The notes beneath the pieces are model-generated. The model saw only the letters and a program-made list of their open reading frames with translations, was not told the origin of the DNA and searched no databases. Below, piece after piece: positions 939 through 15,932 of a DNA stretch of 64,000 nt; positions within the stretch are counted from its first letter, which is position 1; the number at the start of each line of letters is the position of its first letter. The stretch covers positions 62,001 to 126,000 of IMG/VR virus record IMGVR_UViG_3300017971_000185; one strand, written 5' to 3'. A program made the translations under genes and the position numbers.

Positions 939-3900
939 ATGCCAGACGGCACCCAGATTCCTGGTCACATTTACGCGCCCCCCAACGTCTACGTCGAGAC
1001 TCAGACTGACACGCCGGTTCAAGCACCGATTCAGGGTGTTCGCATTCCGGTGTTCATCGGCACGGGCAACGAGGTTCTGACTCAGACGGATCTCGCGGTG
1101 GTTCGCGGGTCGTCTTCCAGTGTTGACCAGCAGGTTCCGCAGGAGGACATGACCGGCCGCGCGGTTGTCGCAATTCTGGCTTCCGGCGAGGTCGTCCTGG
1201 GTGACTTCGATGGTGATCGGCGGCTCATCCAGGTGCGCAATTATCCCATCGTCACGGGCGACGGGACGGGTACCACGGCGACGGATGCAGCCAGCATCCA
1301 GGTGACGATCAACGGGCAGCCTGACGTGGTTTTGAACGTCCAGGGGGACAGAGGGGTGCTTGAGCTTTCGACGGCTCCAGGGCTCCATGACGACGTGAGA
1401 TGCACGTATTTCTTCAACCGGACCGACACGCTGATCACGGACGACGTGAGCGATCAGGTGACTGCGGATCCCGCGCTCATTTACGGGAGCGGCGAGGAAC
1501 CCGCAGGCGGCTACGACATCACGGTGGACAACAATGAGTTGATCCTGACCATCGATGGCGTCGAGACCACCATCAGCCTGGGGACGCCGGGCGTGAAGCC
1601 CGCAGCTACCGTGGTCTCGTTGATCAACGGAGCGGCCTCTTCTACGTCTCTTGTGGCTTCGCTCTACACCACGAATTTCGGCGGCACTGCCATCCAATTC
1701 GTGGCCGACGAAAACCTCATCGTTGGTGCCGGTACGGCCAACACACTTCTTGGTCTGACCACGGGTGACGCGACCAATCGGCGCTCGACGTTCTACACAT
1801 TCCAGGGTCCGATCGTTGACGGTTCCAACGGAGGAATCACGACCACGGACACCGGGAAGGTGACGGTCCGCGTCAACAATGTCCAGGTCATCCCCACGTC
1901 CGTCAATGGATCGACGCGAGCGGTGACGTTGCCCTTTGCTCCGGCTGCTGGCTCGACCGTCACCATCGAGTACTTTTTCAATAGTTGGCAAGATACCTTC
2001 GACTATCTGGCGAACATCAACCTCACGGAGATCACCCGAGTCGGCATCGTTCCGGGGAACAGCGATTTCGTGCAGGGTGCGGACTTCGTGCTCAAGGATG
2101 ATGTCATTGTCTGGGGTACGTCGGTTCTCATCACTTCGGGTGTTCACACCGAAGGAAGCACGTACTTCGGTGGAGATGGAGGCCAGGTCAGCGCGCTCTT
2201 GGTGGATGCGCAGACGTACTTGGAGGAAGCCACTCCTGTCACGGATGCGACGGTCAGCCCGCCAGTTACGAGTCGGACGAAATTCGACCTTCCGTTCCAG
2301 CCCACGACGGGCAACGGACGCAACACGCCGATCGGGTTGAGTCTGTTCCAGACGGTCAGCAACAACCGTATCGATCTTCCGACCAATCGCCCGGATCTGG
2401 TGATCGCCTATTGGGGCTTCTCGGTCGAGGATGCTTTGCAGCGTGGTCCGGTGGACGTGACAGCGGTCGAGGGAACCAGGATCACTTTGAAGGATCCCGT
2501 GGACGTGGGTGCAACGGTCTACGCCACGTTCTACTACAACACGCTCGTAGATGAGGAGTACAGCCTGGTTTGTGACGTGGCTGGTGCTTCGGGCATTGGT
2601 ACCTATTTCATCCAAGACTCGAATAGCAACGACATGTTCACGCCGCGGTTTGGCGTGAAGGGGGCTGCGCTCACGGGCATCACCATCCAATTCCCGAGCG
2701 GCAGCGAGCTAACCCCGGACGTGCGTTTCGAGAGTGGTACGGACGGTCCGGTCGAGGAGACGGTCACGGTCTCGTTCGCGAGCATCGATGACACGATTGC
2801 GAAGTACAGCGTGCCCGGATCGGGACCGTACTTCACGATCGAGGATGCCTCTGATCATGCACGTTTCTTGATCGACGGCACGGCACCGACTGGTGGCGGA
2901 GCGGGAATCGATCTTGCCCGTGTGGACGGAATCACCGGCTTGGGCGTGTCGGCCAGCTTGCTGGGCGAGGAGATCGAGTATGACGTAGCCTCGGGCAGCA
3001 CGACCTACGACATTACGGCCGGGACCAACGACGAGGTTTCGGTCACGGTCGATGATGTGCTCATTACGTCGATCGCTGCGGCAGGAACGGGTGTCAACGC
3101 GGACAACTACGTTGACGCGCTCAATGCTTTCGCCAAGCTGCAACAGTTTGCTCCGTTCTACACGGCACAGACACGTTTCGTGGGGTCGACGGTCATTACT
3201 GCCGGCGAGTACGACACTTTGGTCATGCACTACAATGGTGCTGTGGCAGGCCCATCGGGTGCGATCACGGCGATCATTCCGCCGCTGACCTACGCCAGCC
3301 CCATGGCTCTGGCAACGGCTCTGGATGGAGTGATTGCAGCCGCAGTCGGTGGTTTGGGTCCGGCGTTTGCCGGGTTGGCGATCAACGTTACTGTGGATGC
3401 CAATAGCCGGCTCCGATTCACGTTGCAGGCGGCGACGGGAGACATCGGCACTTTCGCGGCCGGTGGTGTCATCACCGTGGCGTTAGTGCCGGTCGTGGGT
3501 GACCAGATCATCTTCACGGATTGGGCTGGGAACCAGGCAGCACTCACGGCAGATACGGCCACAACGCCAGGCGGCAACAACTTCGACGTGTCGTCCGGTG
3601 TGGCAGCCACGATCGCTGGTCAGATCGCTATAGCGATTCAAGATGTGACGAACAACGTGGCTTCGATCGTGACCACGACGGGCGCTGTTGGTGTGACGAT
3701 TCCAGTGGTGCCAACTGTTCCGGGTACGCTCGGAAACCGGGTCGTCATGGCCGAATCCGCCGCAACTCCGGCAACCTTCACGTTCGTACAGCCTTCGGGC
3801 GCGACGGACTTGGCAGGTGGCTATTTGGAGTTTGCGGACGCACCGACGCTTGCCAGCGATTTCGCGATTCTGGCAGGCATCAGCGTGGCTCCGGCACCGG

Positions 3901-6322: not shown

Positions 6323-6352
6323 TTGCCGTGGGGTCTGTGGTGGTGGTATGGT
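6323..6352 (+). promoter_or_regulatory. Sigma70-like promoter for a leaderless nuclease-MTase mRNA
   Basis: TTGCCG (6323-6328)-N18-TATGGT (6347-6352) with TGn extension; ATG 6 nt downstream at 6359 and no clear SD. Confidence 0.5.
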
Positions 6353-6358
6353 GGTGGT

Positions 6359-8542
6359 ATGGATGAGGAGATCTGTGCAGCCTTTCGGTCCGATCTGTCT
6401 TCTGCCGCGGTTGCTGAATCGTTGGGGGTTGGTCGACAGCGTGTTCTCAAAGTCTGGAAGGCTTCCTTTGGTGCCGGTGAGGTAAGAGCACGTGCGAATA
6501 GGCTTCGCTCTCGCCCCAAGAAAGAAGATCCTCAGCAACGGGCAGCAGCTCTGCCGTGGTTCGCTGAGGGTGTGGCAGTCAAGGAGGCTGCGCGAAGATT
6601 GGGTGTCCACTATCTCAAGGTTCAACGATGGTGGATCGAAGAGTTTGGAGAAGAAGTATATCGGAGTCGTGGAAAGCGTCTTCAAGCTGCGCGAACGGCA
6701 GCCAATAACCGTAGAGGATTGCCGAAGACGCAAACGGTTGTACGAGTCGCCTGTGAAGACTGCGGCACGGAACACGACCGTACAATGATGAGTTTGGCCA
6801 AGGCTGCGCGGCTCATTTGTCCAACGTGTAAGAGCAAGAAGCAAGATCCGCATGCGTGTCCGGTGTGTGGTTTTGTGTTCGAAGGCGCTCGGGGGTTGGC
6901 GTCTCATTTTCGGCATCAACGGAATTGCTCTGCGCATAAGGAGTATCGACGCAAGCAATGGGAAGTCCTGGCAAGTCGGACTGACGAGTACGTGACTTGC
7001 CAGGAGTGTGGCTTCGTAGGTCGGTCGATTTCGGCTCATATTCAAACACACGACCTAAATTGGAGGAGCTACACGCGTAAGTATCCTGGTGCTCCTCTGT
7101 ATTCGGCGATCTCAGAGGCACGGAGGCGTGCTCGTATCCGGGAAACACATGCCAGGTACGGATTCACATACGCGGACTTCAAGGCGTACCTGGATGACGA
7201 GCATCGTTTGATTGTGGCGGCTGCGGCTAAGGGATTGGGAGTTGCTCAAGATACGGTGCGGACATACGCGAAGAAACTAGACATCCCTACGCGGAATCGA
7301 TTGGCGTGGCAGCGAGAAGTCTTGCAGACGGTAGCTGATGTTTTGGGCGAAGCGTATAAGTGGGAATGGTCTGACGATCGTATTCGAAATCCCGAGACGG
7401 GGAGGTTACTGAATTATGACGGCTGTTTTCCCAAGTCAAAGGTGATCGTGGAGTGCCATGGAATTCAGCATTACCAGTTTGTTCCTCGATGGCACCGTCT
7501 TCCAGAGGAATTTGTCAAGTTGCGGGAGCGAGACGTTTACAAAAAAGAGCGAGCGGAGGAGCTTGGCTATACCGTGATCGAAGTGCGCTATGATGCAGAG
7601 GTATCTCGTGAGTTTTTCATGGAGTTGTTGCGAGCACCAAAGAAGAGTCGTCAGGCGGTGAAGGACAAGGCCGAGACAATTCTGCGGGAGCTACGGAGGG
7701 ATTGCTTTCCGTTTCCGGTGATCGATCCAGAGGAGACTCGGAGGGAGTTGGAAAGGCTACAACGGAAGCGCCTGAAGTTAGTTGACGGGATTATCGTTCC
7801 TCGTTCGTGGGTTGGGACCAAAGTCTGCAAAGCATATTTCCCCAATCTCTTCCAAGCCAGGTACAAGAATCAGCTATCGGCTGTAGAGGCGTGGAATTCG
7901 GATGAGAAGCTCCGGCTTGCTATCCTGACTCAACTAGACTCGTCGCATCCGACGACACCAGAACGAGTGCTTAAGGCGATTCTGATGCATCATCGGGTTC
8001 CTACGGTTTTCCGTCCAGCTTATGCTCGATACTTGTATGACCGCTACTGCCCGGAAGGCAAGACAACATGGGATCCTTGCGCAGGGTGGGGCGGGCGTCT
8101 CTTGGGCGCCGCAGCGGCGAATGTGAGATACATCGGAACGGAGATTGATGCTCTTACTGTCGAGGGGAATCGCAGGTTAGCTTCCGATCTGCGGCATGAC
8201 GCGGAGATCATTGAAGGGTCGGCATTGGGCGCGGACATCCCTCAGGTAGACTTTGTATTCACCTCTCCGCCCTACTATGACGTTGAGCAGTATTCAGACC
8301 ATCCTGAACAACCTCACATGCGATTTGGTTCCGAGGAGGATTGGGTAGAGGGGTTTCTCTTGCCTTTGGTCAGGAAGGCACGTTCTGTGCTGCCTCAAGG
8401 CTGCGCTATGGCTCTCAACCTCTCCGATGCCTTGCTAGGGCGTCTAGAAGAGTGCGCTTTTGATTGTGGTTTTGAGCTTGAGACCGTGGTTGGCTTTGAG
8501 CTTCCGAATGGAAAGGTTGCTCGGACAGCCGTTTACCGATAG
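6359..8542 (+). CDS. HTH/zinc-finger + PD-(D/E)xK (DUF559/Vsr-like) endonuclease fused to amino-DNA methyltransferase
   Basis: CEDC..CPTC, CPVC..H..H, CQEC..H..H fingers; NYDGCFPKSKVIVECHGIQHY..RDVYK nuclease motif; MTase motif I WDPCAGWGGRLLG and motif IV FTSPPYY; more A/T-ending codons than neighbours. Confidence 0.85.
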   Translation: MDEEICAAFRSDLSSAAVAESLGVGRQRVLKVWKASFGAGEVRARANRLRSRPKKEDPQQRAAALPWFAEGVAVKEAARRLGVHYLKVQRWWIEEFGEEVYRSRGKRLQAARTAANNRRGLPKTQTVVRVACEDCGTEHDRTMMSLAKAARLICPTCKSKKQDPHACPVCGFVFEGARGLASHFRHQRNCSAHKEYRRKQWEVLASRTDEYVTCQECGFVGRSISAHIQTHDLNWRSYTRKYPGAPLYSAISEARRRARIRETHARYGFTYADFKAYLDDEHRLIVAAAAKGLGVAQDTVRTYAKKLDIPTRNRLAWQREVLQTVADVLGEAYKWEWSDDRIRNPETGRLLNYDGCFPKSKVIVECHGIQHYQFVPRWHRLPEEFVKLRERDVYKKERAEELGYTVIEVRYDAEVSREFFMELLRAPKKSRQAVKDKAETILRELRRDCFPFPVIDPEETRRELERLQRKRLKLVDGIIVPRSWVGTKVCKAYFPNLFQARYKNQLSAVEAWNSDEKLRLAILTQLDSSHPTTPERVLKAILMHHRVPTVFRPAYARYLYDRYCPEGKTTWDPCAGWGGRLLGAAAANVRYIGTEIDALTVEGNRRLASDLRHDAEIIEGSALGADIPQVDFVFTSPPYYDVEQYSDHPEQPHMRFGSEEDWVEGFLLPLVRKARSVLPQGCAMALNLSDALLGRLEECAFDCGFELETVVGFELPNGKVARTAVYR

Positions 8543-8798
8543 TCGTTCTAGTCGTGTTTTCCCATCAGAGGATCGGGCTTCGTTGCAGAAGCGACGAAAC
8601 GGGGGCTTGCAAGAAGCCTCTTGCCAAGAGTCGTAGCCAGGTTCGGCGTATTCGCCAGCGAACCAGATCGCTTCGATTTGGCGTCGTCCTTGGGGCGTCT
8701 TGGCCGAACGAACGGCAGCTTGTAGGGCTGGGCGACACGTCATGGGAGCCATTGGGTGCTTTCTCAGCACATCGATGGCGTGGTGTTTCGCAACTACG

Positions 8799-8869
8799 GC
8801 CGAAGCCCAAGGGCGGTATCGATTCCCGTCCTTGGGCTGTCACGCCATTGTCGGGTTAGTTGAAGTCAC
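8799..8869. repeat. 71-bp direct repeat copy 1 (hairpin + duplicated DUF932 3' end)
   Basis: 68/71 identical to 9907-9977 (offset 1108); includes hairpin 8804-8838. Confidence 0.95.
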
Positions 8870-8906
8870 CCGCTGCTGTATATTCAACCTCAGGTCGGTG
8901 CTGTAG
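8870..8906 (+). pseudogene. Relic of a second allele of the tail sheath 3' end
   Basis: ccg ctg ctg tat att / ttc aac ctc agg tcg gtg ctg tag encodes PLLYI and FNLRSVL*, matching sheath end PLLYIIVTFNLRSVL* (6231-6278) with synonymous differences and 11 nt fewer. Confidence 0.85.
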
Positions 8907-8920
8907 TTGCTCAGTCTTGG

Positions 8921-8942
8921 GGCCGCCGGATTTCCGGCGGCC
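8921..8942. terminator. Perfect GC hairpin, probable bidirectional terminator
   Basis: GGCCGCCGGA-TT-TCCGGCGGCC between relic sheath stop and the stop of the convergent gene at 8943. Confidence 0.7.
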
Positions 8943-9311
8943 TCACTTCTTCTTGACCTTCCAGGGAGTGGTCTCTTCTGGGTGGAACGTGGCCTCGATG
9001 CCAGCCTCATCGAGCGCGCCAACGAGATCAAGAAGCATCAGGAGCGAAGTCTCGATCGTGTCTTTTGGGGACTTGGTGGAAAACTTGTAAGCCTGGTCTC
9101 CGAAACGGAGGGAGACGGTTTGACAGTCGCTAGAGATGTGGATGGACGAGTGGTCTCGGATGCTCATGCGTGCCTCTACCGCTCGCGCTTCGGCTGCGTC
9201 GCGCTTGTCTTGCAGTGCAGTTGTTGTCGATACATGGTCCACGAACCGCACCCACCCGCCGTCGTCGGCCGCGTACATGCCGGAAGGTCTCCATTCGTAT
9301 CGCTTATCCAC
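8943..9311 (-). CDS. Hypothetical protein
   Basis: 122-aa ORF overlapping the upstream gene stop, ends at the terminator hairpin. Confidence 0.65.
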   Translation of the reverse strand: MDKRYEWRPSGMYAADDGGWVRFVDHVSTTTALQDKRDAAEARAVEARMSIRDHSSIHISSDCQTVSLRFGDQAYKFSTKSPKDTIETSLLMLLDLVGALDEAGIEATFHPEETTPWKVKKK

Positions 9312-9633
9312 TGTCCGACTTCTTTCCGTAACGCCCGATGCACTCGTCGCGTTTGCGTTGGATCTCGGTCTCGTCTTGCTCGGTGGTGCGGGGTGGCCTG
9401 TCGTTCATCCACGCGAGGTCAAAGGCAGCGCACGCCTTCTCGGGAGTGTCGCCAAACCCGGCCACGCCAACCTGCAAGTCTTCGCCTAGCAGCGCGCACC
9501 ACTGGTTTCCGTCTGGGAAAATGCGTGGCCGGAACACGACTGAGGGGCGCGAATACTGCTCGCCTACGATCGCTGCCTGTCTACAGATCTCTGCGCCTGC
9601 GGCCGTTGCTTCTAGCCCGACCGTCGTCCTCAT
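9304..9633 (-). CDS. Phage hypothetical protein (DGNQWCAL...GVAGFGDTP, possibly HicB-like fold)
   Basis: ATG at 9633 with GGAG SD; recognisable phage motif; the listed longer ORF start (9918) is unlikely. Confidence 0.7.
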   Translation of the reverse strand: MRTTVGLEATAAGAEICRQAAIVGEQYSRPSVVFRPRIFPDGNQWCALLGEDLQVGVAGFGDTPEKACAAFDLAWMNDRPPRTTEQDETEIQRKRDECIGRYGKKSDSG

Positions 9634-9634
9634 C

Positions 9635-9697
9635 TCACTTCTCCCATTGTCCGAAGCCGGCATCGCGATAGCCAGGTCGTCCCGTGTAGTTAGCCAT
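9635..9697 (-). CDS. 20-aa peptide MANYTGRPGYRDAGFGQWEK
   Basis: Fills the gap between RHH stop (9699) and next ATG (9633) with 1-nt spacers; GGAAGG upstream. Confidence 0.4.
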   Translation of the reverse strand: MANYTGRPGYRDAGFGQWEK

Positions 9698-9698
9698 A

Positions 9699-9860
9699 TT
9701 AGCCTTCCAGGGGTGGTAGGGCGACTTGGAGGACAGCCCGTACCAGCGTAGAGGGCGATACCCCGCGGTCCCTCGCTATCTTCTCCAGCCGGGCGCGGTA
9801 GCCTGCCGGCAACCGAAGGTGGAAATGCTCGGAAAGCTCGACGCCCCTGTTCGAGAGCAC
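9699..9860 (-). CDS. Ribbon-helix-helix (CopG/Arc-like) DNA-binding protein
   Basis: HFHLRLPAGYRARLEKIARDRGVSPSTLVRAVL fits the RHH pattern; start (GTG 9860) uncertain. Confidence 0.7.
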   Translation of the reverse strand: MLSNRGVELSEHFHLRLPAGYRARLEKIARDRGVSPSTLVRAVLQVALPPLEG

Positions 9861-9906
9861 GAAGTCGATCTGGGTTGAAAGGTCTCTTGATCGCAATGTT
9901 GCACCT

Positions 9907-9977
9907 GCCGAAGCCCAAGGGCGGTATCGATTCCCGTCCTTGGGCTGTCGCGCCGTTGTCAGGTTAGTTGAAGTCAC
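9907..9977. repeat. 71-bp direct repeat copy 2 (DUF932 stop + terminator-like hairpin 9912-9946)
   Basis: AGCCCAAGGGCGG-N9-CCGTCCTTGGGCT just downstream of DUF932 TAA. Confidence 0.95.
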
Positions 9978-10770
9978 GCCGGAGGCCACAGAAGCCATCG
10001 AGCAGGACGTGAAGCTGCTCAGTCTTGGCCGGAAGGGTGAAGAGATCGTTGCTTTCGCGTCGGGGCTTGAGAACCTCGGTAAACGCGTTCATCAGCCGCC
10101 AGGTGGTCGGTCCCGCTTCTCGGAATTCGGGGTGACGGGGCTCTCTCCACTCGGAGAGGATCTGCGAGATCTTGCTGGAGGCGATGACATCGGCATCGAG
10201 CGCGCGAATGAGCAGGTCGTTTACCTGCGCGTCGTTTAGCTCGTGCTGCTTGTACGTCGCGAGGCGCTGGTCTTGGAAGTCCTTGAGCGCTGCGACTTGC
10301 TGGAGAGCCTCGGCGATCAGCTTGGCAAGATCGCGAAGGATGTTCGGGGTGTGCTTGCGACCGACCTTGATTTCGCCGGAGAAGCACAGGTTGTCGCAAA
10401 CGAACACGCCCGAGCCGACTACAAGGCCAGCCAGGAACGTCTTGTCGTTGGCGTTGCGGAGCCCGAGGATGATGCTGTAGTCCGGGTCGAGGATCGGGCT
10501 GTTCATCTCCGTGGGAACAGGATCGAGCACCGGAGCCGGTGCTACTTCCAGCATTCCGAAGTAGCGCAGGTTCTCGTGAGAGAGTGCGTGTACCTCTTGG
10601 ATGGTGGTTAGCCCCACGGTGGTGATTTGGTTCTCCACTTCCTCCAGCAGTGTGCTGTGGGGGATGGGGGTGTGTCTTGGGCCGGCGGCCTCAGGCTCGG
10701 GCAGCGTAAAGAGGACTTCCCGAGGAACCTGATGGGCACCGCAGTGAGTCAAGAGGTTGAGGTTTGTCAT
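9964..10770 (-). CDS. DUF932-family protein
   Basis: HTPIPH, GLRNANDK, VFVCDNLCFSGE, RKHT, TTWRLMNAFTE motifs; GGAG SD. Confidence 0.85.
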   Translation of the reverse strand: MTNLNLLTHCGAHQVPREVLFTLPEPEAAGPRHTPIPHSTLLEEVENQITTVGLTTIQEVHALSHENLRYFGMLEVAPAPVLDPVPTEMNSPILDPDYSIILGLRNANDKTFLAGLVVGSGVFVCDNLCFSGEIKVGRKHTPNILRDLAKLIAEALQQVAALKDFQDQRLATYKQHELNDAQVNDLLIRALDADVIASSKISQILSEWREPRHPEFREAGPTTWRLMNAFTEVLKPRRESNDLFTLPAKTEQLHVLLDGFCGLRRDFN

Positions 10771-10788
10771 GTCGTATCTCCTGTCTCT

Positions 10789-10816
10789 TCTACGCGAGAT
10801 TCGGGGGAAAGTTTAC
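10789..10816 (-). promoter_or_regulatory. ECF-like early promoter GTAAACTT-N12-CGCGTAGA, copy A
   Basis: Identical boxes and spacing in three places, each 17-18 nt before an ATG. Confidence 0.8.
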
Positions 10817-10824
10817 ATAGTCGC

Positions 10825-11280
10825 TCATTCGCATCGGCGAATCGGAGCTTTTCTAGGTTGCGGGGTGTTTACATAGTATGTCTTCGCTTCGGATCTGAGC
10901 CACTTCAAGAAGATGGTAACCCTCGGTGCGTCGTATTCGTTCACGGTTTTCAAGGGCGCGTCCATACCCTTCTTAAAGGCTGCGAAGGCTTGCTTTTGCT
11001 TCATCCACAGACCGTCGCTGGGTATGAGCCATAGACGTTCCCAATTGTTGCTCAGGCAGAGGGCTTCATCGAGAGACTCGACAGGCTCAAAGTACCAAGC
11101 CCAGTGCCCCTTGCAGGTTCCACCGATGCAGCCGGGCGAGATGACCCAACCCTCTTCGTAGTCCTTGCAAAGTGTGCCGATGGTGATGCCTTCTACGCGC
11201 ACGTCGTATTGACAAGCGTTGCGGTGCTTTTCGGCCAGCCGCTTGAATTCGACGTTCATCTTTTGGTAGCCGCTGATCAT
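10825..11280 (-). CDS. Hypothetical protein
   Basis: ATG 2 nt after PolX stop; 151 aa. Confidence 0.6.
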   Translation of the reverse strand: MISGYQKMNVEFKRLAEKHRNACQYDVRVEGITIGTLCKDYEEGWVISPGCIGGTCKGHWAWYFEPVESLDEALCLSNNWERLWLIPSDGLWMKQKQAFAAFKKGMDAPLKTVNEYDAPRVTIFLKWLRSEAKTYYVNTPQPRKAPIRRCE

Positions 11281-11282
11281 GT

Positions 11283-12023
11283 TTAGCTCGCTATCTCGCA
11301 CTCTTTGTTGTACTTGGCCTGAGCGGTCTCGATGTGACGGCATTTGCGCCGAAACTGGAAGCCCTCGCACTCGCAATTCCAGCGGTTGTTCTTGCCAAGC
11401 CAGACTCGGTAAGAACCATCCTTGGCGCTCGGGATCTCGCACTCCCATTCGACTTCGCCACGGAAGCACTTGAGATCGTCACGAGCGGGCGGGGTGGTGT
11501 ACTCCAGCCCGAGCGCTTCGAAAACCTCGCGTTCGGTCTTACCGGCGATGCGCCGATACCAGCGCTTTTCAGTCTCGCCCTTCCGCTTGACGTGAATGAA
11601 CGCGTAGCCCTGGGACTCGTCCGTTTCCTCGGGATCACATGGCTTGTATACGCCCTTTTCGTTGAGGAGTAGCCCCAGCGCGGCGGCGTGGCTTCGCATC
11701 TTGATGTTGAAGGTATGCGGGCCGGTCAGGTAGAGCCACGCGGCGCCGAAGCCATCTTCATCGGGCGCTCGGATCACGTCTACCTGCATGCCACCCACGA
11801 TGAGCCGGATCTTGGCATCCTTTCCTTGGACCCACTCGAAACCAGCTTTCTCGATTTCCGCCTGTGTGGGTAGCGTGCCGAGGAACACGATATCGACATC
11901 GCGAACGTACTCTTTGCCACGACGGAGAGAGCCGGCGATCTTGGCTTCCTTACCGAGCAAGGCGAGGACGGGAGCTACTCGCTCGACCGCGACGCCCTGG
12001 GGAATCTTCTTACCTTTGCTCAT
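11283..12023 (-). CDS. Minimal X-family DNA polymerase with C-terminal SWIM zinc finger
   Basis: AGSLRRGKEYVRDVDIV, QVDV, YLTGP..FNIKMR, LNEKG, TEREVFEALGLEY..P..R; then YRV...WNCECEGFQFRRKCRHI (CxC-xn-CxH). Confidence 0.88.
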   Translation of the reverse strand: MSKGKKIPQGVAVERVAPVLALLGKEAKIAGSLRRGKEYVRDVDIVFLGTLPTQAEIEKAGFEWVQGKDAKIRLIVGGMQVDVIRAPDEDGFGAAWLYLTGPHTFNIKMRSHAAALGLLLNEKGVYKPCDPEETDESQGYAFIHVKRKGETEKRWYRRIAGKTEREVFEALGLEYTTPPARDDLKCFRGEVEWECEIPSAKDGSYRVWLGKNNRWNCECEGFQFRRKCRHIETAQAKYNKECEIAS

Positions 12024-12303
12024 CGTTGGTCTCCTTTAGCCGATACCAGAGGAAGCCTCGGTCTACACACTCAGCGACTCGAATGGCAGTGCTCTCCAGC
12101 ACGAGATGCTTGACCGGATGCCCGGACGAGCAAACCGGACACGGTCCGGTGAATGAGCCGGTGATTCGTATTCGTGCTCCGCCAAGCTCGGAAGGAAGCC
12201 TGACCCAATCGGGAGCGCCGTCGCCCACGAGGTACATGCTCTCGTCCTCCGTGGAGGGTGAGGCGAAGTCGCCGGGGCGGCGGTTGAACCATGCGGTGGT
12301 CAT
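12010..12303 (-). CDS. Hypothetical protein (CPVC, possible Zn site)
   Basis: ATG in a TGATG overlap with the upstream stop. Confidence 0.6.
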   Translation of the reverse strand: MTTAWFNRRPGDFASPSTEDESMYLVGDGAPDWVRLPSELGGARIRITGSFTGPCPVCSSGHPVKHLVLESTAIRVAECVDRGFLWYRLKETNDEQR

Positions 12304-12519
12304 CAGGACGCCTTGGCTTCGGGAGCACTCTCCAGCTTGAGATCATCCCCGATGGCTGTCAACGCATCTTGGAAGGACCCCACGAAGGTGTTGCGAGAGG
12401 CGGTTATCACGTTGATGTGACGGCCGCGCCTCTCCTTGGGTCCGGCGAGTCCGCGGTCGATGCTTGTCCTGGTAGACGAGGGTCCGGTCGTCGCGGGAGG
12501 TTTCGAGAAGAAGGTGCAT
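12303..12519 (-). pseudogene. Small gene split by a +1 frameshift
   Basis: SD+ATG at 12519 (MHLLLETSRDDRTLVYQDK) and the C-terminus coupled to the next gene (IDRGLAG...APEAKAS*) are in different frames; span 217 nt = 3n+1. Confidence 0.5.
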
Positions 12520-12537
12520 CTTTTGCTCTCCAACCTC

Positions 12538-12565
12538 TCTACGCGAGATCCCCGAAGAAGTTTAC
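12538..12565 (-). promoter_or_regulatory. ECF-like early promoter, copy B
   Basis: GTAAACTT-N12-CGCGTAGA. Confidence 0.8.
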
Positions 12566-12619
12566 ATTTCAAAACGCGCGTAGGGCGCGGGCAAATCCTT
12601 CGATAGAAGCCTGTCTACG

Positions 12620-12877
12620 ATGGCTCTGGCCAAGATCATTAGGTTTGTCCGCTTGGCGGACGGCAAGACCAAGCTGGAGGCGAAGCGTGGAGCGAAGAAT
12701 CCCTACTTGAACACGCCGCCGACTGTGTTGAAACGCGATCTCGAAAAGGAGACCAATCCCATGAAACGCAAGTTGATGAGCGACGCATTGAATGCTTGGC
12801 GGATGACGCATGGGAATCCTTTGGCTCGTTCTGCGGCTCGTGTAGCTGCGCGTTGGCTCGACAGCGGAGGGACCTGA
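12620..12877 (+). CDS. Small basic hypothetical protein
   Basis: 85 aa, K/R-rich, stop 2 nt before the SpeD-like ATG. Confidence 0.65.
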   Translation: MALAKIIRFVRLADGKTKLEAKRGAKNPYLNTPPTVLKRDLEKETNPMKRKLMSDALNAWRMTHGNPLARSAARVAARWLDSGGT

Positions 12878-12879
12878 CG

Positions 12880-13275
12880 ATGCATGGGCCGTTTGCTGGT
12901 TGGCACCTAATCGTGGATGCTCTCGTCGGGTCTGGAGATCCCACTGACCGGTTGGCGGATGTTGAGTTTCTGGAGACGTTTCTCAGGGATCTCGTGATCC
13001 ATCTGGATATGAAGATCCTGGGCGGTCCCTACATGAATGTGGTCGAGCCCGATTCGAAGCTCATTGAGACGGAAGAGGATGAGGGTGGGGTGACAGGATG
13101 TGTAGTGATCACAACGAGCCATATCTCACTGCACACGTGGCCGCTACGCAACCGCTTCTCCCTCGACATCTACTCGTGCAAGCAGTTTGACCCGGATGCA
13201 GCTAAGGACTTCATCACGGGACGACTTAGTTGCACGGAGCGAAGTATCAACTGGACGCAGCGGCTCTGGCCTTAG
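12880..13275 (+). CDS. speD: S-adenosylmethionine decarboxylase-like pyruvoyl proenzyme
   Basis: GWHLIVD, GGVTGCVVITTSHISLHTWP, DIYSCK; GGAGG SD before ATG 12880. Confidence 0.85.
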   Translation: MHGPFAGWHLIVDALVGSGDPTDRLADVEFLETFLRDLVIHLDMKILGGPYMNVVEPDSKLIETEEDEGGVTGCVVITTSHISLHTWPLRNRFSLDIYSCKQFDPDAAKDFITGRLSCTERSINWTQRLWP

Positions 13276-13590
13276 CTACTTGTCCTTGTCTAGATCGGCC
13301 TTGCAAGCGTCCAGGTCTTCATACGTGATGAGCAACGGGCGCTCATCCACATCGGGGAAACACTGATTGGGCACGCACTGTGACTTCACGTCCCAGCCAT
13401 CGACGGTGGTCACGATGGAGCAGGTGAAGCCATCCTTGCAGCCGTCCTCGCCGTGGGGTGCCTCTTCATCGCATTCGTCCGCAGGCGCATTCACGACAAT
13501 CGGATCGCTCTGCGTGTCAGCGGCAGGCGCCGTCTGCAAAGGAGCGTTGGCCGTCAGAGCGAGGAACCCGGTGAGGATGGTGGTGAGCAT
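13276..13590 (-). CDS. Exported Cys-rich protein with signal peptide
   Basis: Hydrophobic N-terminus MLTTILTGFLALTANA, 6 Cys, acidic; GGAG SD. Confidence 0.7.
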   Translation of the reverse strand: MLTTILTGFLALTANAPLQTAPAADTQSDPIVVNAPADECDEEAPHGEDGCKDGFTCSIVTTVDGWDVKSQCVPNQCFPDVDERPLLITYEDLDACKADLDKDK

Positions 13591-13607
13591 TTCTTGTCTC
13601 CACCCAG

Positions 13608-13635
13608 TCTACGCGGGTTTTGTGGAGAAGTTTAC
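13608..13635 (-). promoter_or_regulatory. ECF-like early promoter, copy C
   Basis: GTAAACTT-N12-CGCGTAGA. Confidence 0.8.
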
Positions 13636-13654
13636 TGCGCCAAGTCCGCGCCCC

Positions 13655-13666
13655 TAGCTTGTCTAT
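13655..13666 (+). promoter_or_regulatory. Candidate late motif TAG-N5-CTAT before tube gene
   Basis: TAGcttgtCTAT. Confidence 0.35.
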
Positions 13667-13722
13667 TTTCAAGCGCTTAACGAGGGTGGTGCGTCGCGCA
13701 TTCCCCGCCCTTAGGAGACAGT

Positions 13723-14520
13723 ATGCCAAACACCGATCTAGTCCAGGGAGGCGCAGCAGGGCTCCAGGGCTCTAGCTCCGTCTACGACTACGGGACTTCC
13801 CCCAACACGAGAACAGCCGTTTCACAGAAGGTGAGGATCTTGTCCCCGGCCTACGGGACGACAAGTCAGCTTCTTCAGATTGGCGTGCTGACCAACTTCA
13901 CACCTTCCGAGAGTCGCACTGTCGAGCCCCTACGCGGCATTGGGTTTGGCGATCAGATCGCTGAGCTTGTGCCGTCCGTGACGACAGAGATGACGCTGAG
14001 CTTTGAGCGAGCGTTGCTCTACATGGCGAATCTCTGGCAGGCGACTGGTTACGCTGGAGGCATCGACGGGCCCGTGCGTTCGTTGAAGCATCACAGGTGG
14101 CCGTTCGATGTGGAGGAGCAGCTTGTGTTTTCGACTCTTGTCGATATGGCACTTGGAGTCGAGAACGTGGGCTACCAGGGTCAGGGTTTCCAGGGAGGAA
14201 CGGCTCAGATCGTCTATCCCGATCAGCTAGATGGCGAGACCGGCCCGACTCCCAACGGTCCTTTCCCGCAGGGTGGCCAGCAGGGACACACGGCCATCAT
14301 CACCATGTACGAGGCGTGCTGGTTCACGTCTTGGTCCAAGACCAACATCACCCGCGACACGGGAATGCTCATGGAGACGGGAGATGCGATGGTCACCGAC
14401 GTTCACGACTTCGCCTCCGAGTACGGAGAATTTCTGGCTACGGGCAACGACCCATCCGTAGGCCAGCTTGGATCAGTCAGGTTTGGCGATCCACAGGCAG
14501 GAGGGACGCCGTTCGGCTAG
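13723..14520 (+). CDS. Tail tube protein
   Basis: IGVLTNFTPSESRTVEPLRGIG..ELVP, PFD, YEACWFTSWS tube-fold pattern; AGGAG SD; position between sheath and tape measure. Confidence 0.8.
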   Translation: MPNTDLVQGGAAGLQGSSSVYDYGTSPNTRTAVSQKVRILSPAYGTTSQLLQIGVLTNFTPSESRTVEPLRGIGFGDQIAELVPSVTTEMTLSFERALLYMANLWQATGYAGGIDGPVRSLKHHRWPFDVEEQLVFSTLVDMALGVENVGYQGQGFQGGTAQIVYPDQLDGETGPTPNGPFPQGGQQGHTAIITMYEACWFTSWSKTNITRDTGMLMETGDAMVTDVHDFASEYGEFLATGNDPSVGQLGSVRFGDPQAGGTPFG

Positions 14521-14526
14521 GGTACA

Positions 14527-14708
14527 GTGGCCTAAAACCGAGCAGTCGGTGGTTTCCAAGAATCAGACGCAGATGAATATCAGATCATATCCAGATTCCC
14601 GTGCTGTCTCCTAAACCCTATATCAGATCCAGACCCACATAGATCAGACCCAGATTCGTTTGCGCTGTTTTCCAGGCCACCGCTTGCTCTCTCAACGGGA
14701 GTAGCGGT
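14527..14708 (+). ncRNA. Candidate structured leader with CAGA repeats and SD-sequestering hairpin
   Basis: Closing stem GTGGCCT (14527-33)/AGGCCAC (14674-80) around 8 CAGAY units; hairpin 14679-14708 pairs GGGAG just before ATG 14709. Confidence 0.5.
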
Positions 14709-15932
14709 ATGACAATCAACTTTGAGGCTCTGCAAGCCTCGCTCGAAAAGATCGGGCAACTAGGCCAAGCGGAGCGTTCTTTCAAAGCAGGCGACCACGC
14801 GATCACCATTCGTGTGCTTCAAGCACGTGAGGAGATCGAGGTCGATAAGTACGCTCAGATAGCCTGGGATGAGGCTTCGGGAGATGAAGACCGGGCTGCC
14901 TTGGCGGACTACATCGATCGGGTGCGGGTAGCCACTCTGTCACACGTCATCGTTCAGATTGGCGATCAAGACCTTCGACGGGAGGAGTTTGTCGAGACGG
15001 GGGAGGAGGACGAGAACGGGAACAAGGTCAAGAAGCCTCGTTATCTCGTGATTCGCGAGATGATCGGCAAGTGGAGTCGGCCTGTTTTGCACATGTGTTA
15101 CCTCAACTACGGGACTTTGGTTCAAGAAGTCGAGAGTGCTTCTAGTAAGAGTATCGAGTCCTCAGAGGCTAACGTCGGGGGAGAGATCGATCGCCTTCAA
15201 ACGCGGTTAGAGAACCTCAAGCGCATTCAGAGTGAGCAGAAGGCCATGGCTGATCGTGCCGCCATGACGGCGCAGACACGAGAGGCTCTCGGTGAGTACA
15301 GCCAAGCCCATGAGGATCACATTGACCGACTGGCAACTGTGACGGGAGAGGTTGTAGAAGAGTCCGAGTCCGAGCCCGAGGCCGCGCCCAAGGCTGAAGG
15401 CGCGACCGAGCCCCCGAAGCGGCCTGTCAGACGAGAGCCGACGATACCACGTCGGGCAGTGCCGCCTGTGCGCGCTCAGAAGTCCGAACCTGTTGATGCG
15501 GACGGGATACCGCTGCCACATGAGGGGGATTCGTTCTACGATCCGGCCGATGGGGATGCGGCTGTAGCGGCTGAGCACAAACGTCTGGAAGCTTTCCGAC
15601 AACAAAAGATGCGGGCGCAATCGAGACCCACAGCAGAACCAGAAGCGCCTGAATCTCCAGAACCGGAACCGGAGCCCCTTGAGCCTTTGCCTGGGGTGAC
15701 GCGAGGACGGAAGCCGCCACACCGAGACGCACTCAACACGGCTGACGCCGTGCTCAATCTTCAGGGAGAGACGGTAGTGGACCAGCCCAAAGCTGCCACG
15801 GAAGCAGTAGAGGGTGTTCGATTGCCGACAGAGACCCTAAGTCCTCGATCGAAGCCAACAGAAAAACCAACGAAGGCTCCTGTGGATCCTCCACCAACGG
15901 GCTCAAGAAACCCGCGGTTTAGAGGTGCGTAG
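14709..15932 (+). CDS. Probable tail assembly chaperone with long Pro/Glu-rich C-terminus
   Basis: Position between tube and tape measure; ITIRVLQAREE chaperone-like start. Confidence 0.6.
   Translation: MTINFEALQASLEKIGQLGQAERSFKAGDHAITIRVLQAREEIEVDKYAQIAWDEASGDEDRAALADYIDRVRVATLSHVIVQIGDQDLRREEFVETGEEDENGNKVKKPRYLVIREMIGKWSRPVLHMCYLNYGTLVQEVESASSKSIESSEANVGGEIDRLQTRLENLKRIQSEQKAMADRAAMTAQTREALGEYSQAHEDHIDRLATVTGEVVEESESEPEAAPKAEGATEPPKRPVRREPTIPRRAVPPVRAQKSEPVDADGIPLPHEGDSFYDPADGDAAVAAEHKRLEAFRQQKMRAQSRPTAEPEAPESPEPEPEPLEPLPGVTRGRKPPHRDALNTADAVLNLQGETVVDQPKAATEAVEGVRLPTETLSPRSKPTEKPTKAPVDPPPTGSRNPRFRGA

What the first reader, a model, noticed from the sequence alone, without database searches (positions are those of the whole stretch)
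10789..13635. Three-copy ECF-sigma-like promoter defining an early regulon on the minus strand
Seen: GTAAACTT-N12-CGCGTAGA is perfectly conserved at 10789-10816, 12538-12565 and 13608-13635, each 17-18 nt before an ATG with a GGAG SD. The copies head DUF932, the PolX operon and the exported protein. Established: ECF sigma promoters usually have AAC in the -35 box and CGT in the -10 box. Inference: the phage uses a host or phage-encoded ECF sigma for accessory genes, which could help identify the host.
Basis: partly seen in the sequence, partly recalled or inferred. Interest (0 to 1): 0.6.

Follow-up and report, generated by a model that had tools for sequence, protein, structure and literature searches.

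The report
Genome-wide ECF-like promoter class, megaphage
The three repeats are real, but they are 3 of about 41 near-identical promoter sequences spread over a roughly 0.5-Mb phage genome. They have the shape of promoters read by ECF-type sigma factors and are most likely read by a sigma-like protein the phage itself encodes, which is a familiar kind of phage gene control carried out by a family nobody has described.

Summary
**Observation.** It is confirmed. GTAAACTT-N12-CGCGTAGA occurs exactly at window 10789-10816, 12538-12565 and 13608-13635 on the minus strand. Each copy lies 17-18 nt upstream of an ATG, with a GGAG in between.

**Scale.** This is not a three-copy regulon. The window lies in a 497-kb virus record that holds 41 such sites, against 0 in a reversed-sequence control.
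- Nearly all sites are intergenic and point at a start codon 2-23 nt downstream.
- The invariant bases are AAC-N16-CGTA, the architecture of ECF sigma promoters (Bacillus subtilis sigmaW type).
- A pyrimidine-purine step 6-7 nt after the motif predicts where transcription starts.

**Who reads it.**
- Pfam models found no phage RNA polymerase.
- The phage encodes a divergent 375-aa protein with sigma2 and sigma4 domains, which lies outside the window.
- That protein family occurs on huge-phage contigs up to 618 kb and is almost absent from cellular genomes.
- Relatives carrying the family have their own abundant two-box motifs in the same position before genes (AACTT-N14-CGTAG; CTTAT-N15-AGTAG; TGTAAC-N16-TACACT).

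**Genes served.** They are non-structural: DNA ligase, PolX, a PARP-like enzyme, DnaJ and HTH regulators. The sigma gene itself lacks the motif, so a "middle" class fits better than "early".

**Limits.** No RNA data exist, and the host remains unknown.

**Verdict.** A new member of a known kind.

The parts
10789..10816 (-). Promoter copy 1. The -35-like box GTAAACTT is at 10809-10816 and the -10-like box CGCGTAGA at 10789-10796. The spacer is TCCCCCGAATCT.
   Evidence: Exact match. PWM score 48.1 bits.
10782..10782 (-). Predicted transcription start of copy 1: an A, the 7th nt after the motif, preceded by C. GGAG follows at 10778-10781 and the ATG is at 10768-10770.
   Evidence: Inference from the pyrimidine(6)/purine(7) bias over the 41 sites, 33/41 at each position, and from the sequence. 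Not measured.
9964..10770 (-). First gene of unit 1: a 268-aa DUF932-like protein.
   Evidence: Pfam PF06067, 21.2 bits, just under the cut-off of 23.
12538..12565 (-). Promoter copy 2. The spacer is CTTCGGGGATCT. This is the best-scoring site in the genome.
   Evidence: Exact match. PWM score 50.6 bits.
12531..12531 (-). Predicted transcription start of copy 2: the first G of GGAG at 12528-12531. The ATG is at 12517-12519.
   Evidence: Inference. Not measured.
11283..12519 (-). Unit 2: a 58-aa basic ORF (12343-12519), a 97-aa ORF (12010-12303), and a 246-aa protein with a PolX thumb domain and a SWIM zinc finger (11283-12023).
   Evidence: ORF list. Pfam PF14791 at 60.8 bits and PF04434 at 23.9 bits.
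13608..13635 (-). Promoter copy 3. The spacer is CTCCACAAAACC.
   Evidence: Exact match. PWM score 38.8 bits.
13601..13601 (-). Predicted transcription start of copy 3: the first G of GGAG at 13598-13601. The ATG is at 13588-13590.
   Evidence: Inference. Not measured.
13276..13590 (-). First gene of unit 3: a 104-aa protein with a signal-peptide-like N-terminus and a cysteine-rich remainder.
   Evidence: Translation. No Pfam or PHROG family.
8918..8945 (.). A GC-rich hairpin with a 12-bp stem, at the far end of the minus-strand block. It sits between that block and the plus-strand gene 6323-8542. Likely a terminator.
   Evidence: Terminator-like scan. Its function is inferred.

Best explanation
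The three repeats are members of one class of about 41 core promoters of a roughly 0.5-Mb phage.

**Anatomy of each site**
- A -35-like box, GTAAAC(TTyy).
- A weakly conserved mid-spacer block, rAATCy.
- A -10-like box, CG-CGTAGA.
- The invariant bases are AAC-N16-CGTA.

**Proposed mechanism**
- The host's core RNA polymerase is directed to these sites by an alternative two-domain (sigma2 + sigma4) sigma factor of the ECF type.
- The most likely candidate is the phage's own 375-aa sigma-like protein (G000 293800-294927, outside the window).
- Transcription probably starts about 7 nt after the final A of TAGA.
- The resulting mRNAs either begin directly with the GGAG ribosome-binding site (ATG 15-23 nt after the motif) or are nearly leaderless (ATG 6-11 nt after it).

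**What the class controls**
- Short units of non-structural genes: DNA repair and replication accessories, host-takeover-type enzymes and regulators.
- It does not control the long structural operons.
- The sigma gene itself lacks the motif, so the class is most likely delayed-early or middle.

**Shown versus inferred**
- Shown: the motif, its count, its orientation, its position relative to start codons, the sigma-like fold, and the analogous motifs in relatives.
- Inferred: promoter activity, the start site, which sigma reads it, and the timing.
For: **The motif is a discrete, genome-wide class**
- 11 exact copies and 38 with up to 2 mismatches, against 0 for the control pattern.
- A PWM built from the sites gives 41 sites, all above 24 bits. 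The next best score is 10.3 bits, and nothing in the reversed-sequence controls exceeds 10 bits.
- An unbiased dyad count returns TAAAC-N16-CGTAG as the top bipartite word pair of the genome: 26 observed against 0.27 expected.

**It sits where a promoter must sit**
- 33 of 41 sites have an ATG-initiated ORF of at least 30 aa starting 2-23 nt downstream, against 15% of random positions.
- Several sites form back-to-back divergent pairs.
- No sigma70-type promoter is found in window 8500-14800: 0 found, 2.1 expected from shuffles.
- Downstream of the motif, position 6 is a pyrimidine in 33/41 sites and position 7 a purine in 33/41.

**The architecture matches ECF promoters**
- A5, C6, C23, G24, T25 and A26 are invariant in all 41 sites.
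- This matches the literature: AAC in the -35 box, and tGAAACnTTTt...CGTA for sigmaW (PMC5758882).

**No phage RNA polymerase was detected** with PF00562, PF00623 or PF00940.

**The phage has a sigma-like protein**
- TIGR02937 (sigma70-ECF) matches at E 4.8e-6 over model positions 21-159 of 165.
- Homologues are named "sigma24 family" by JGI.
- In the AlphaFold model, residues 185-367 align only to sigma factors in the top 50 rows. The best is M. tuberculosis ECF sigma L at Z 8.1 over 155 aligned residues. Sigma4 alone superposes at rmsd 2.5 A and sigma2 alone at 2.9 A.

**The family is phage-borne**
- It is found on IMG/VR contigs of 200-618 kb.
- It gave 1 hit among genomes of 185,579 prokaryotic species.

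**Relatives carrying the family have their own motifs in the same place**
- L062 (sigma 87% identical) has the same two boxes with different spacers.
- L059 (49%) has 15 sites of AACTT-N14-CGTAG in 11.7 kb, against 2 in the control.
- G015 (436 kb) has about 50 sites of CTTAT-N15-AGTAG(TCTAGG), followed by GGAGG and an ATG.
- G010 (234 kb) has about 45 sites of TGTAACTT-N9-10-CGTGCTACACT.

**Protein and DNA conservation run broadly parallel.** Sigma2 is better conserved than sigma4 across the family (0.79 against 0.61 mean column identity). This parallels the better-kept -10 core and the more variable -35 box.

**The downstream genes are non-structural**.
Against: - No transcription start data exist. 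All 11 public runs holding this DNA are DNA runs kept as contigs.
- The sigma-like protein falls below every curated threshold: TIGR02937 26.3 against 42.9 bits, Sigma70_r2 14.9 against 24, Sigma70_ECF 13.9 against 21.1. Foldseek E-values are weak, the best being 0.07.
- Unlike classical ECF sigmas, its gene has no copy of the motif upstream. No anti-sigma partner was identified.
- The phage has other sigma4-like proteins that could be involved: a 204-aa tandem-sigma4 protein and small proteins of 73 to 145 aa.
- Covariation is not clean. L060, L063 and L066 have sigma4 domains closer to G000's (64-67% identity) than L059 does (48%). Yet their few sampled sites show GTGTGT at the -35 position, while L059 keeps GAAC.
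- G010's motif can also be read as an extended -10 promoter of the primary-sigma type (TGcTACACT), so not every relative's motif need belong to this sigma.
- Every phage has promoters, so finding a motif in genomes that were selected for carrying the sigma is not proof of a link.
Confidence: 0.6

Rival explanations
1. The sites are promoters read by a host ECF sigma factor, not a phage one. The phage borrows a host stress sigma for its accessory genes.
For: The consensus is a textbook ECF promoter, AAC-N16-CGTA with a T-rich stretch after the AAC, as for B. subtilis sigmaW. The phage sigma candidate scores below the curated family thresholds.
Against: - Host ECF sigmas are normally held inactive by anti-sigma factors and are present at low levels (established knowledge). 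That is a poor basis for 41 phage promoters.
- The phage carries its own sigma2+sigma4 protein.
- Related phages from other samples have altered versions of the motif, and each carries a diverged copy of that protein.
- The host is unknown, so this was not tested directly.
Confidence: 0.15
2. The conserved boxes are binding sites for a phage transcription factor that sits on the promoter region as an activator, a repressor or a sigma appropriator of the T4 MotA/AsiA type. Candidates are the 204-aa tandem-sigma4 protein and the 752-aa protein with five LuxR-type HTH repeats. RNA polymerase would carry a different sigma.
For: - The two 8-bp boxes lie 20 bp apart centre to centre, about two helical turns. 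That suits a protein with two HTH domains.
- Such proteins exist in the genome.
- The 5xHTH gene itself is preceded by the motif.
Against: - The ATG lies only 6-23 nt downstream, so the motif occupies the whole space where the -35 and -10 elements must be. No sigma70-like hexamers are present there.
- The boxes are neither palindromic nor direct repeats.
- The invariant bases are the ones ECF sigmas read.
Confidence: 0.12
3. The sites are promoters of an unrecognised phage-encoded RNA polymerase, either single-subunit or a highly divergent multisubunit enzyme, hidden among the giant unannotated proteins.
For: Many giant ORFs (1779, 1847, 1814 and 3634 aa) have no Pfam match. Pfam can miss divergent phage polymerases, and the PF00940 control rang in none of the 14 control genomes.
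Against: - No hit to the double-psi beta-barrel polymerase domains PF00562 or PF00623, whose controls worked.
- D-x-D-G-D-like strings occur at about the chance rate.
- Two boxes separated by a 16-nt variable spacer is the geometry of sigma70-family recognition. It is not that of T7-like, N4-like or phiKZ/AR9-type promoters (established knowledge; PMC9209446 and PMC5449584 for AR9).
Confidence: 0.06
4. The sites are not functional signals: chance similarity, or copies of a small repeat or mobile element.
For: None beyond the fact that function has not been measured.
Against: - 41 sites against 0 in controls.
- The spacers differ between copies while the boxes stay fixed.
- Orientation and distance to start codons are strict.
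- The boxes are conserved with different spacers in a relative whose sigma is 87% identical.
- No Rfam family matches.
Confidence: 0.01

Closest known systems
ECF (group 4) sigma-dependent promoters, especially Bacillus subtilis sigmaW (tGAAACnTTTt ... CGTA)
   Same: - Bipartite, with AAC in the -35 box and CGTA in the -10 box.
- A 16-nt gap between the AAC and the CGT.
- A T/pyrimidine-rich stretch directly after the AAC.
- Very close adherence to the consensus (PMC5758882).
   Different: - Found in a phage genome in 41 copies.
- The -10 box extends to CGCGTAGA and is followed by a G-rich discriminator.
- There is an extra semi-conserved mid-spacer block (rAATCy).
- There is no copy in front of the candidate sigma gene, so no autoregulation.
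- The genes served have nothing to do with envelope stress.
Phage-encoded alternative sigma factors with their own promoter classes: SPO1 gp28 and gp33/34, T4 gp55, phiEco32 gp36, and the sigma factors of jumbo phages that lack an RNA polymerase
   Same: A phage without its own polymerase encodes a sigma-family protein and carries a uniform, non-host-like promoter class in front of a temporal set of genes. Sources: PMC7824862 for jumbo phages, PMC13401047 abstract for SPO1, and my own knowledge for T4 and phiEco32.
   Different: - The protein belongs to a family with no PHROG and no Pfam family of its own.
- It has a conserved N-terminal domain of about 180 aa with no recognised fold.
- It is found on uncultivated huge phages only.
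- The link between this sigma and this promoter has not been tested.
T4 middle promoters (a MotA box at -30 plus a sigma70 -10 element, with AsiA remodelling sigma70)
   Same: A phage-specific upstream box at a fixed distance from a -10 element, heading non-structural middle genes (own knowledge; AsiA in jumbo phages, PMC7824862).
   Different: The -10 box here (CGTAGA) is not a sigma70 -10 element, so remodelling region 4 of the host's primary sigma alone would not explain recognition. No MotA or AsiA homologue was looked for specifically.
T7-type single-subunit RNA polymerase promoters
   Same: Highly uniform, phage-specific, many copies, with a G-rich sequence at the start of the transcript.
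   Different: T7-type promoters are about 20 contiguous conserved bases. Here 12 nt between the boxes vary freely, and no such polymerase gene was detected.

Membership tests
ECF-type sigma-dependent promoter | Two conserved boxes at the -35 and -10 positions, separated by a spacer of fixed length (14-17 bp) | tested here: met
   GTAAAC and CGTAGA are separated by exactly 16 nt in all 41 sites, and the spacer sequence varies.
ECF-type sigma-dependent promoter | AAC in the -35 box and a CGT-type -10 box | tested here: met
   A5, C6, C23, G24, T25 and A26 are invariant in 41/41 sites and A4 is present in 30/41. The criterion comes from PMC5758882.
ECF-type sigma-dependent promoter | Transcription starts about 6-8 nt downstream of the -10 box | not testable with these tools
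   No RNA run holds the phage. The only evidence is indirect: a pyrimidine at +6 and a purine at +7 in 33/41 sites each, and GGAG often starting at +7.
ECF-type sigma-dependent promoter | Activity depends on a specific ECF sigma factor | not testable with these tools
   This needs in vitro transcription or genetics.
ECF-type sigma-dependent promoter | A copy lies upstream of the sigma factor's own operon (autoregulation, typical but not universal) | tested here: not met
   No site lies upstream of the sigma-like gene at G000 293800. The nearest co-oriented sites are downstream, at 295870 and 296700. A conserved CGCATAGA in the upstream region differs from the motif at the invariant G24.
ECF (group 4) sigma factor: the 375-aa phage protein | Sigma2 and sigma4 domains only, with no region 1.1 and no sigma3 | tested here: met
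   Model residues 185-367 align to ECF sigma L over 155 of its 174 residues (Z 8.1). Sigma2 (186-270) and sigma4 (about 284-366) also align separately, at rmsd 2.5-2.9 A, and the linker between them is short. The extra N-terminal domain of about 180 aa is not typical of the family.
ECF (group 4) sigma factor: the 375-aa phage protein | Scores above the curated family thresholds (TIGR02937, PF04542, PF08281/PF04545, PF07638) | tested here: not met
   TIGR02937 26.3 bits against 42.9; PF04542 14.9 against 24; PF07638 13.9 against 21.1. PDB profile search: only 3mzy (sigma-H) at E 0.008.
ECF (group 4) sigma factor: the 375-aa phage protein | A cognate anti-sigma factor encoded next to it | not tested
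   The neighbouring genes were not analysed for anti-sigma folds.
T7-like phage RNA polymerase promoter | A single-subunit polymerase gene in the genome and a contiguous conserved block of about 20 bp | tested here: not met
   PF00940 gave no hit, although its control also rang nowhere. The motif has a variable 12-nt interior.
Repressor operator or stoperator-type site | Dyad symmetry or a short asymmetric site whose position is not tied to the core promoter | tested here: not met
   The boxes are not complementary to each other. The sites are strictly oriented and lie 2-23 nt from start codons.

The most novel reading that the evidence does not exclude
The sigma-like protein may define a phage-exclusive sigma family shared by a wide clade of uncultivated huge phages (200-618 kb). 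Its features are a conserved N-terminal domain of unknown fold, a well-conserved sigma2 domain and a fast-evolving sigma4 domain.

On this reading, each lineage has co-evolved its own set of 40-50 near-identical promoters: GTAAAC/CGTAGA here, CTTAT/AGTAGT in G015, and TGTAAC/TACACT in G010. These would be natural orthogonal sigma-promoter pairs. They would yield mRNAs that begin with the ribosome-binding site or are leaderless. They would run the non-structural half of the infection programme on host core RNA polymerase.
Probability: 0.35. Interest if true: 0.6.

Novelty: new member of a known kind. Interest (0 to 1): 0.42.

Why it matters
- **A first regulatory map for a half-megabase phage.** For an uncultivated phage of about 0.5 Mb there is now a concrete transcription map of 41 predicted start points. 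There is also a named candidate regulator that can be tested with purified proteins, without needing to culture the phage.
- **It may extend across a clade.** The same protein family sits in many huge phages, and three other genomes or contigs show their own two-box motifs in the same position. If the link holds, it would explain how a whole clade of megaphages that lack an RNA polymerase redirects the host enzyme.
- **A possible source of engineering parts.** It would also supply a ready series of highly specific sigma-promoter pairs.
- **Annotation can use it now.** The motif marks the true starts of many small genes that gene callers miss.

Tried and rejected
- **Near-identity search in cultured phages.** No match.
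- **Exact-pattern scan of IMG/VR.** It found only fragments of the same phage (identical spacers) plus one chance hit. This gave no independent conservation evidence.
- **G000 PWM on 20-kb loci of distant sigma-bearing phages, and AACTT-N14-CGTAG on 15 whole records.** Neither was enriched over controls. Distant relatives do not share this exact motif.
- **Simple 8-mer over-representation in those loci.** It picked up only codon or palindrome words and tRNA arms. The dyad count worked instead.
- **G007 (402 kb) dyad search.** It was swamped by a coding tandem repeat, so no promoter motif could be extracted.
- **Search for RNA data.** All 11 runs holding the region are DNA runs kept as contigs, from sediment and seawater metagenomes. 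Read laying was therefore not used, because contigs cannot show RNA ends.
- **Sigma70-type promoter scan upstream of the sigma gene and in the window.** Nothing found.
- **Rfam on window 8500-15000.** Nothing found.
- **N-terminal domain of the sigma-like protein.** No credible relative by atlas features or structure.
- **Host identification via the sigma family in cellular genomes.** One short MAG contig labelled Altiarchaeales, probably mis-binned phage DNA, so not informative.
- **One look-up returned genes but no DNA** (P0017).
- **Complex prediction was not used.** The host polymerase is unknown, and the test is insensitive for phage-host pairs.


Full report
**1. The observation**

GTAAACTT-N12-CGCGTAGA occurs three times without mismatch in the window, all on the minus strand, at 10789-10816, 12538-12565 and 13608-13635. 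At up to 3 mismatches there is one further weak match, inside a gene at 110-137. Shuffles expect 0.21 matches.

The sequence shows an ATG 18, 18 and 17 nt after the motif, with a GGAG in between. The genes behind the three copies are:
- a weak DUF932-like protein;
- two small ORFs followed by a protein with a PolX thumb domain and a SWIM zinc finger;
- a small cysteine-rich protein with a signal-peptide-like N-terminus.

**2. Scale**

The window is positions 62001-126000 of a 497,194-bp IMG/VR virus record (G000), linear as assembled, which CheckV rates 94% complete. The whole record has 11 exact copies and 38 with up to 2 mismatches. The control pattern gives none.

A weight matrix built from these sites converges on 41 sites, all scoring above 24 bits. 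The next best position scores 10.3 bits, and nothing in the reversed-sequence controls exceeds 10 bits. The class is therefore discrete. An unbiased count of all 5-mer/gap/5-mer pairs returns TAAAC-N16-CGTAG as the strongest pair in the genome, 26 observed against 0.27 expected.

The consensus is GTAAACTTyy-nnnn-rAATCy-CGCGTAGA-GRGG. A5, C6, C23, G24, T25 and A26 are invariant. The twelve middle bases differ from copy to copy apart from the weak AATC block.

**3. Position and orientation**

- Nearly all sites are intergenic by a crude gene call.
- 33 of 41 have an ATG-initiated ORF of at least 30 aa starting 2-23 nt downstream, against 15% of random positions.
- Several sites form divergent back-to-back pairs: G000 176170/176199, 232399/232490 and 387018/387061.

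Distances to the ATG fall into two groups. In one group the ATG is 15-23 nt away, and a GGAG often starts at the 7th or 8th nt. In the other the ATG is 6-11 nt away, often as ...GAGATG. Downstream of the motif, position 6 is a pyrimidine and position 7 a purine in 33 of 41 sites each.

Taken together, this puts a likely start of transcription about 7 nt after the final A. On that reading CGTAGA occupies -12 to -7 and GTAAAC occupies -34 to -29. The mRNAs would start with the Shine-Dalgarno sequence or be nearly leaderless. This step is inference; a start 2-3 nt further downstream cannot be excluded.

No sigma70-type promoter is found in window 8500-14800 (0 found, 2.1 expected from shuffles). 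No Rfam family matches.

**4. What kind of promoter**

AAC in the -35 box and CGT(A) in the -10 box, 16 nt apart and with a T-rich stretch after the AAC, is the published signature of ECF sigma promoters. The closest published match is B. subtilis sigmaW, tGAAACnTTTt ... CGTA (PMC5758882).

**5. Who reads it**

Pfam models for the conserved domains of multisubunit RNA polymerases find nothing in G000, while their controls ring in 14 of 14 genomes. The T7-type model also finds nothing, but its control was uninformative. The giant ORFs of the window have no Pfam hits apart from Baseplate_J. D-x-D-G-D strings occur at about the chance rate.

Sigma-domain models pick out several genes. One of them, G000 293800-294927 (375 aa, outside the window), matches TIGR02937 (sigma70-ECF) over nearly the whole model at E 4.8e-6. 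It stays below the curated cut-off, as do its Pfam matches.

Further evidence on this protein:
- It has at least 247 homologues of about 400 aa, several named "sigma24 family" by JGI.
- An alignment of 21 members shows a conserved N-terminal domain, a variable linker and a conserved C-terminal half.
- In the AlphaFold model (pLDDT 70.5), Foldseek's top list is almost entirely sigma factors, but at weak E-values.
- VIA-align places residues 185-367 on sigma factors in all 50 top rows. The best is ECF sigma L of M. tuberculosis (Z 8.1, 155 residues aligned). Sigma4 alone aligns at rmsd 2.5 A and sigma2 alone at 2.9 A.
- The Z values are middling in absolute terms. It is the exclusivity of the hit list and the two-domain coverage that persuade.
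- There is no PHROG family for it.

Other sigma4-like proteins exist in G000: a 204-aa tandem-sigma4 protein at 432225-432839 and small ones of 73, 138 and 145 aa. The assignment of this particular protein to the motif is therefore an inference, not a result.

**6. Relatives**

The family sits on IMG/VR contigs of 618, 436, 402, 297, 266, 234 and 230 kb and others. Among genomes of 185,579 prokaryotic species it gave a single hit, on a 3.4-kb MAG contig. It is therefore a huge-phage family, not a recently borrowed host gene.

| Relative | Sigma identity to G000 | Motif found |
|---|---|---|
| L062 | 87% | Same two boxes (GTAAACTT or GTATACTT ... CGCGTAGA) before ATGs, with different spacers |
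| L059 (11.7 kb of a 13.2-kb contig) | 49% | 15 sites of AACTT-N14-CGTAG against 2 in the control; consensus gtnAACTTt...CACGTAGn; ATG 6-12 nt downstream; mid-spacer block absent |
| L092 | 42% | GTTCAGTTCC-N12/13-CCGTAGGT |
| L091 | 46% | GGTTCAATC-N12-yCAGAAGG-TAG |
| L060, L063, L066 | 50-61% | GTGTGT at the -35 position, 16-17 nt before CGTAG(R) or AGTAGA; only 3-4 sites available |
| G015 (436 kb; direct terminal repeats; CheckV 100%) | 34% | Top dyad is a class of about 50 sites, gggCTTATyTC-N10-rGAGTAGTCTAGGTG, followed by GGAGG and an ATG, often in divergent pairs |
| G010 (234 kb) | 41% | About 45 sites of TGTAACTT-N9-10-CGTGCTACACT with the ATG 10-11 nt after GCTA; could alternatively be read as an extended -10 promoter |

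The exact G000 motif is not enriched in 15 distant records.

Across the family, sigma2 is more conserved than sigma4 (0.79 against 0.61 mean column identity). This parallels the retained (G)TAG core at -10 and the variable -35 box.

The parallel is only qualitative. The lineage with GTGTGT has a sigma4 domain closer to G000's than L059 does, although L059 keeps GAAC. That is an unresolved inconsistency.

**7. What the class controls and when**

Genes directly behind the 41 sites include:
- NAD-dependent DNA ligase;
- the PolX-like protein;
- a PARP/WGR protein;
- HATPase-like, FHA, DnaJ, VWA, PcfJ-like, CxxCxxCC and DUF3228 proteins;
- a 752-aa protein with five LuxR-type HTH repeats;
- many small ORFs.

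No site lies in the long plus-strand blocks at G000 76-140 kb or 390-496 kb. The first of these blocks holds the window's giant ORFs and Baseplate_J.

The sigma gene has no site upstream. It is instead preceded by 600-900 nt of non-coding DNA that is partly conserved in relatives and contains no sigma70-like promoter. No expression data exist: the 11 runs holding the region are DNA runs from sediment and seawater metagenomes, from 9 studies.

**8. Rivals**

- **A host ECF sigma.** This is possible, but it fits poorly with the number of promoters, with the phage-borne sigma, and with the lineage-specific motif changes.
- **A phage HTH factor bound over the promoter.** This cannot be excluded, but it would still need an unusual -10 reader, because CGTAGA is not a primary-sigma -10 element.
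- **A hidden phage polymerase.** This is unlikely given the -35/-10 geometry and the negative domain searches.
- **Chance or a mobile repeat.** This is excluded by the counts and controls.

**9. Comparison and novelty**

In how it works, this resembles the phage-encoded alternative sigma factors of SPO1, T4 and phiEco32, and those of jumbo phages that lack their own polymerase (PMC7824862). In DNA terms it resembles ECF/sigmaW promoters.

It differs in three ways: the protein family is unannotated, carries an extra N-terminal domain, and falls below the curated thresholds; there is no autoregulatory copy; and the genome is a half-megabase uncultivated phage. I rate it a new member of a known kind, of moderate interest.

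My confidence, step by step:
- about 0.85 that these are core promoters;
- about 0.75 that a sigma70-family alternative sigma reads them;
- about 0.55 that it is the phage's 375-aa protein.

Noticed in passing
whole record G000 (window = G000 62001-126000); G001: The window belongs to a 497-kb phage genome. A 372-kb sibling contig (IMGVR_UViG_3300018065_000011) carries the motif sites nearest the two ends of G000 only 12.9 kb apart. It therefore bridges the ends: the genome is circularly permuted or circular, and about 1.35 kb is missing from G000.
   Followed up: partly
G000 293000-293800 (L009:280-900), with further copies near G000 174417, 212437 and 400274: The sigma-like gene is preceded by 600-900 nt of non-coding DNA that is partly conserved in relatives. 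Within it, the element CTATAG(G)TG...GGGGCAGATCTGCC recurs at four intergenic places in G000 and is kept upstream of the sigma gene in L062, L060 and L063. It may be the signal that switches the sigma gene on, or an operator.
   Followed up: partly
G000 432225-432839 (L010:1363-1977) and G000 494402-496660 (L016:667-2925, minus strand): Two unusual DNA-binding proteins. One is a 204-aa protein made of two tandem sigma region-4 domains with no region 2. The other is a 752-aa protein with five LuxR/GerE-type HTH repeats plus DUF7227, and its gene is itself preceded by the motif.
   Followed up: partly
window 939-6278, 21903-27446, 30487-41391, 54902-60346 and neighbouring ORFs (plus strand): A run of giant ORFs (1779, 1847, 3634 and 1814 aa) without any Pfam match, next to a Baseplate_J protein (46515-50045). 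This is presumably a tail or baseplate module with very large unknown proteins. No motif site lies inside this block.
   Followed up: partly
G000 306-366 kb (L082-L084): At least 31 tRNA genes lie in three 20-kb stretches, covering many amino acids. Some motif sites sit directly after tRNA genes, for example G000 314514 after tRNA-Arg and 336929 after tRNA-Leu.
   Followed up: partly
G015 (IMGVR_UViG_3300028840_001395, L095-L114) and G010 (IMGVR_UViG_3300013121_000030, L135-L146): Two other huge phages that carry the sigma family each have their own class of 45-50 two-box motifs immediately upstream of genes: CTTATyTC-N10-GAGTAGTCTAGGTG in G015 and TGTAACTT-N9-10-CGTGCTACACT in G010. In G010 the ATG follows so closely that most of these mRNAs would be leaderless.
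   Followed up: partly
G000 142025-143722 (L073:16025-17722): A 565-aa protein with a PARP catalytic domain and a WGR domain sits directly behind a motif site. It is a candidate ADP-ribosylating host-takeover or DNA-damage-sensing enzyme.
   Followed up: no
window 10866-10880: About 60 nt upstream of promoter copy 1 there is a second ctatGTAAAC on the minus strand, with the same four preceding bases but no CGCGTAGA partner. It looks like a partial duplicate or a decayed site.
   Followed up: no
window 6323-8542 (plus strand): A 739-aa ORF combines a Ros/MucR-type zinc-finger regulator region with the start of an N6/N4 DNA methylase domain. Both matches are below the curated cut-offs.
   Followed up: no
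G000 324137-324164: One good motif site (24.9 bits) has no ORF of at least 30 aa starting within 110 nt downstream. It may drive a small RNA or a very short ORF.
   Followed up: no
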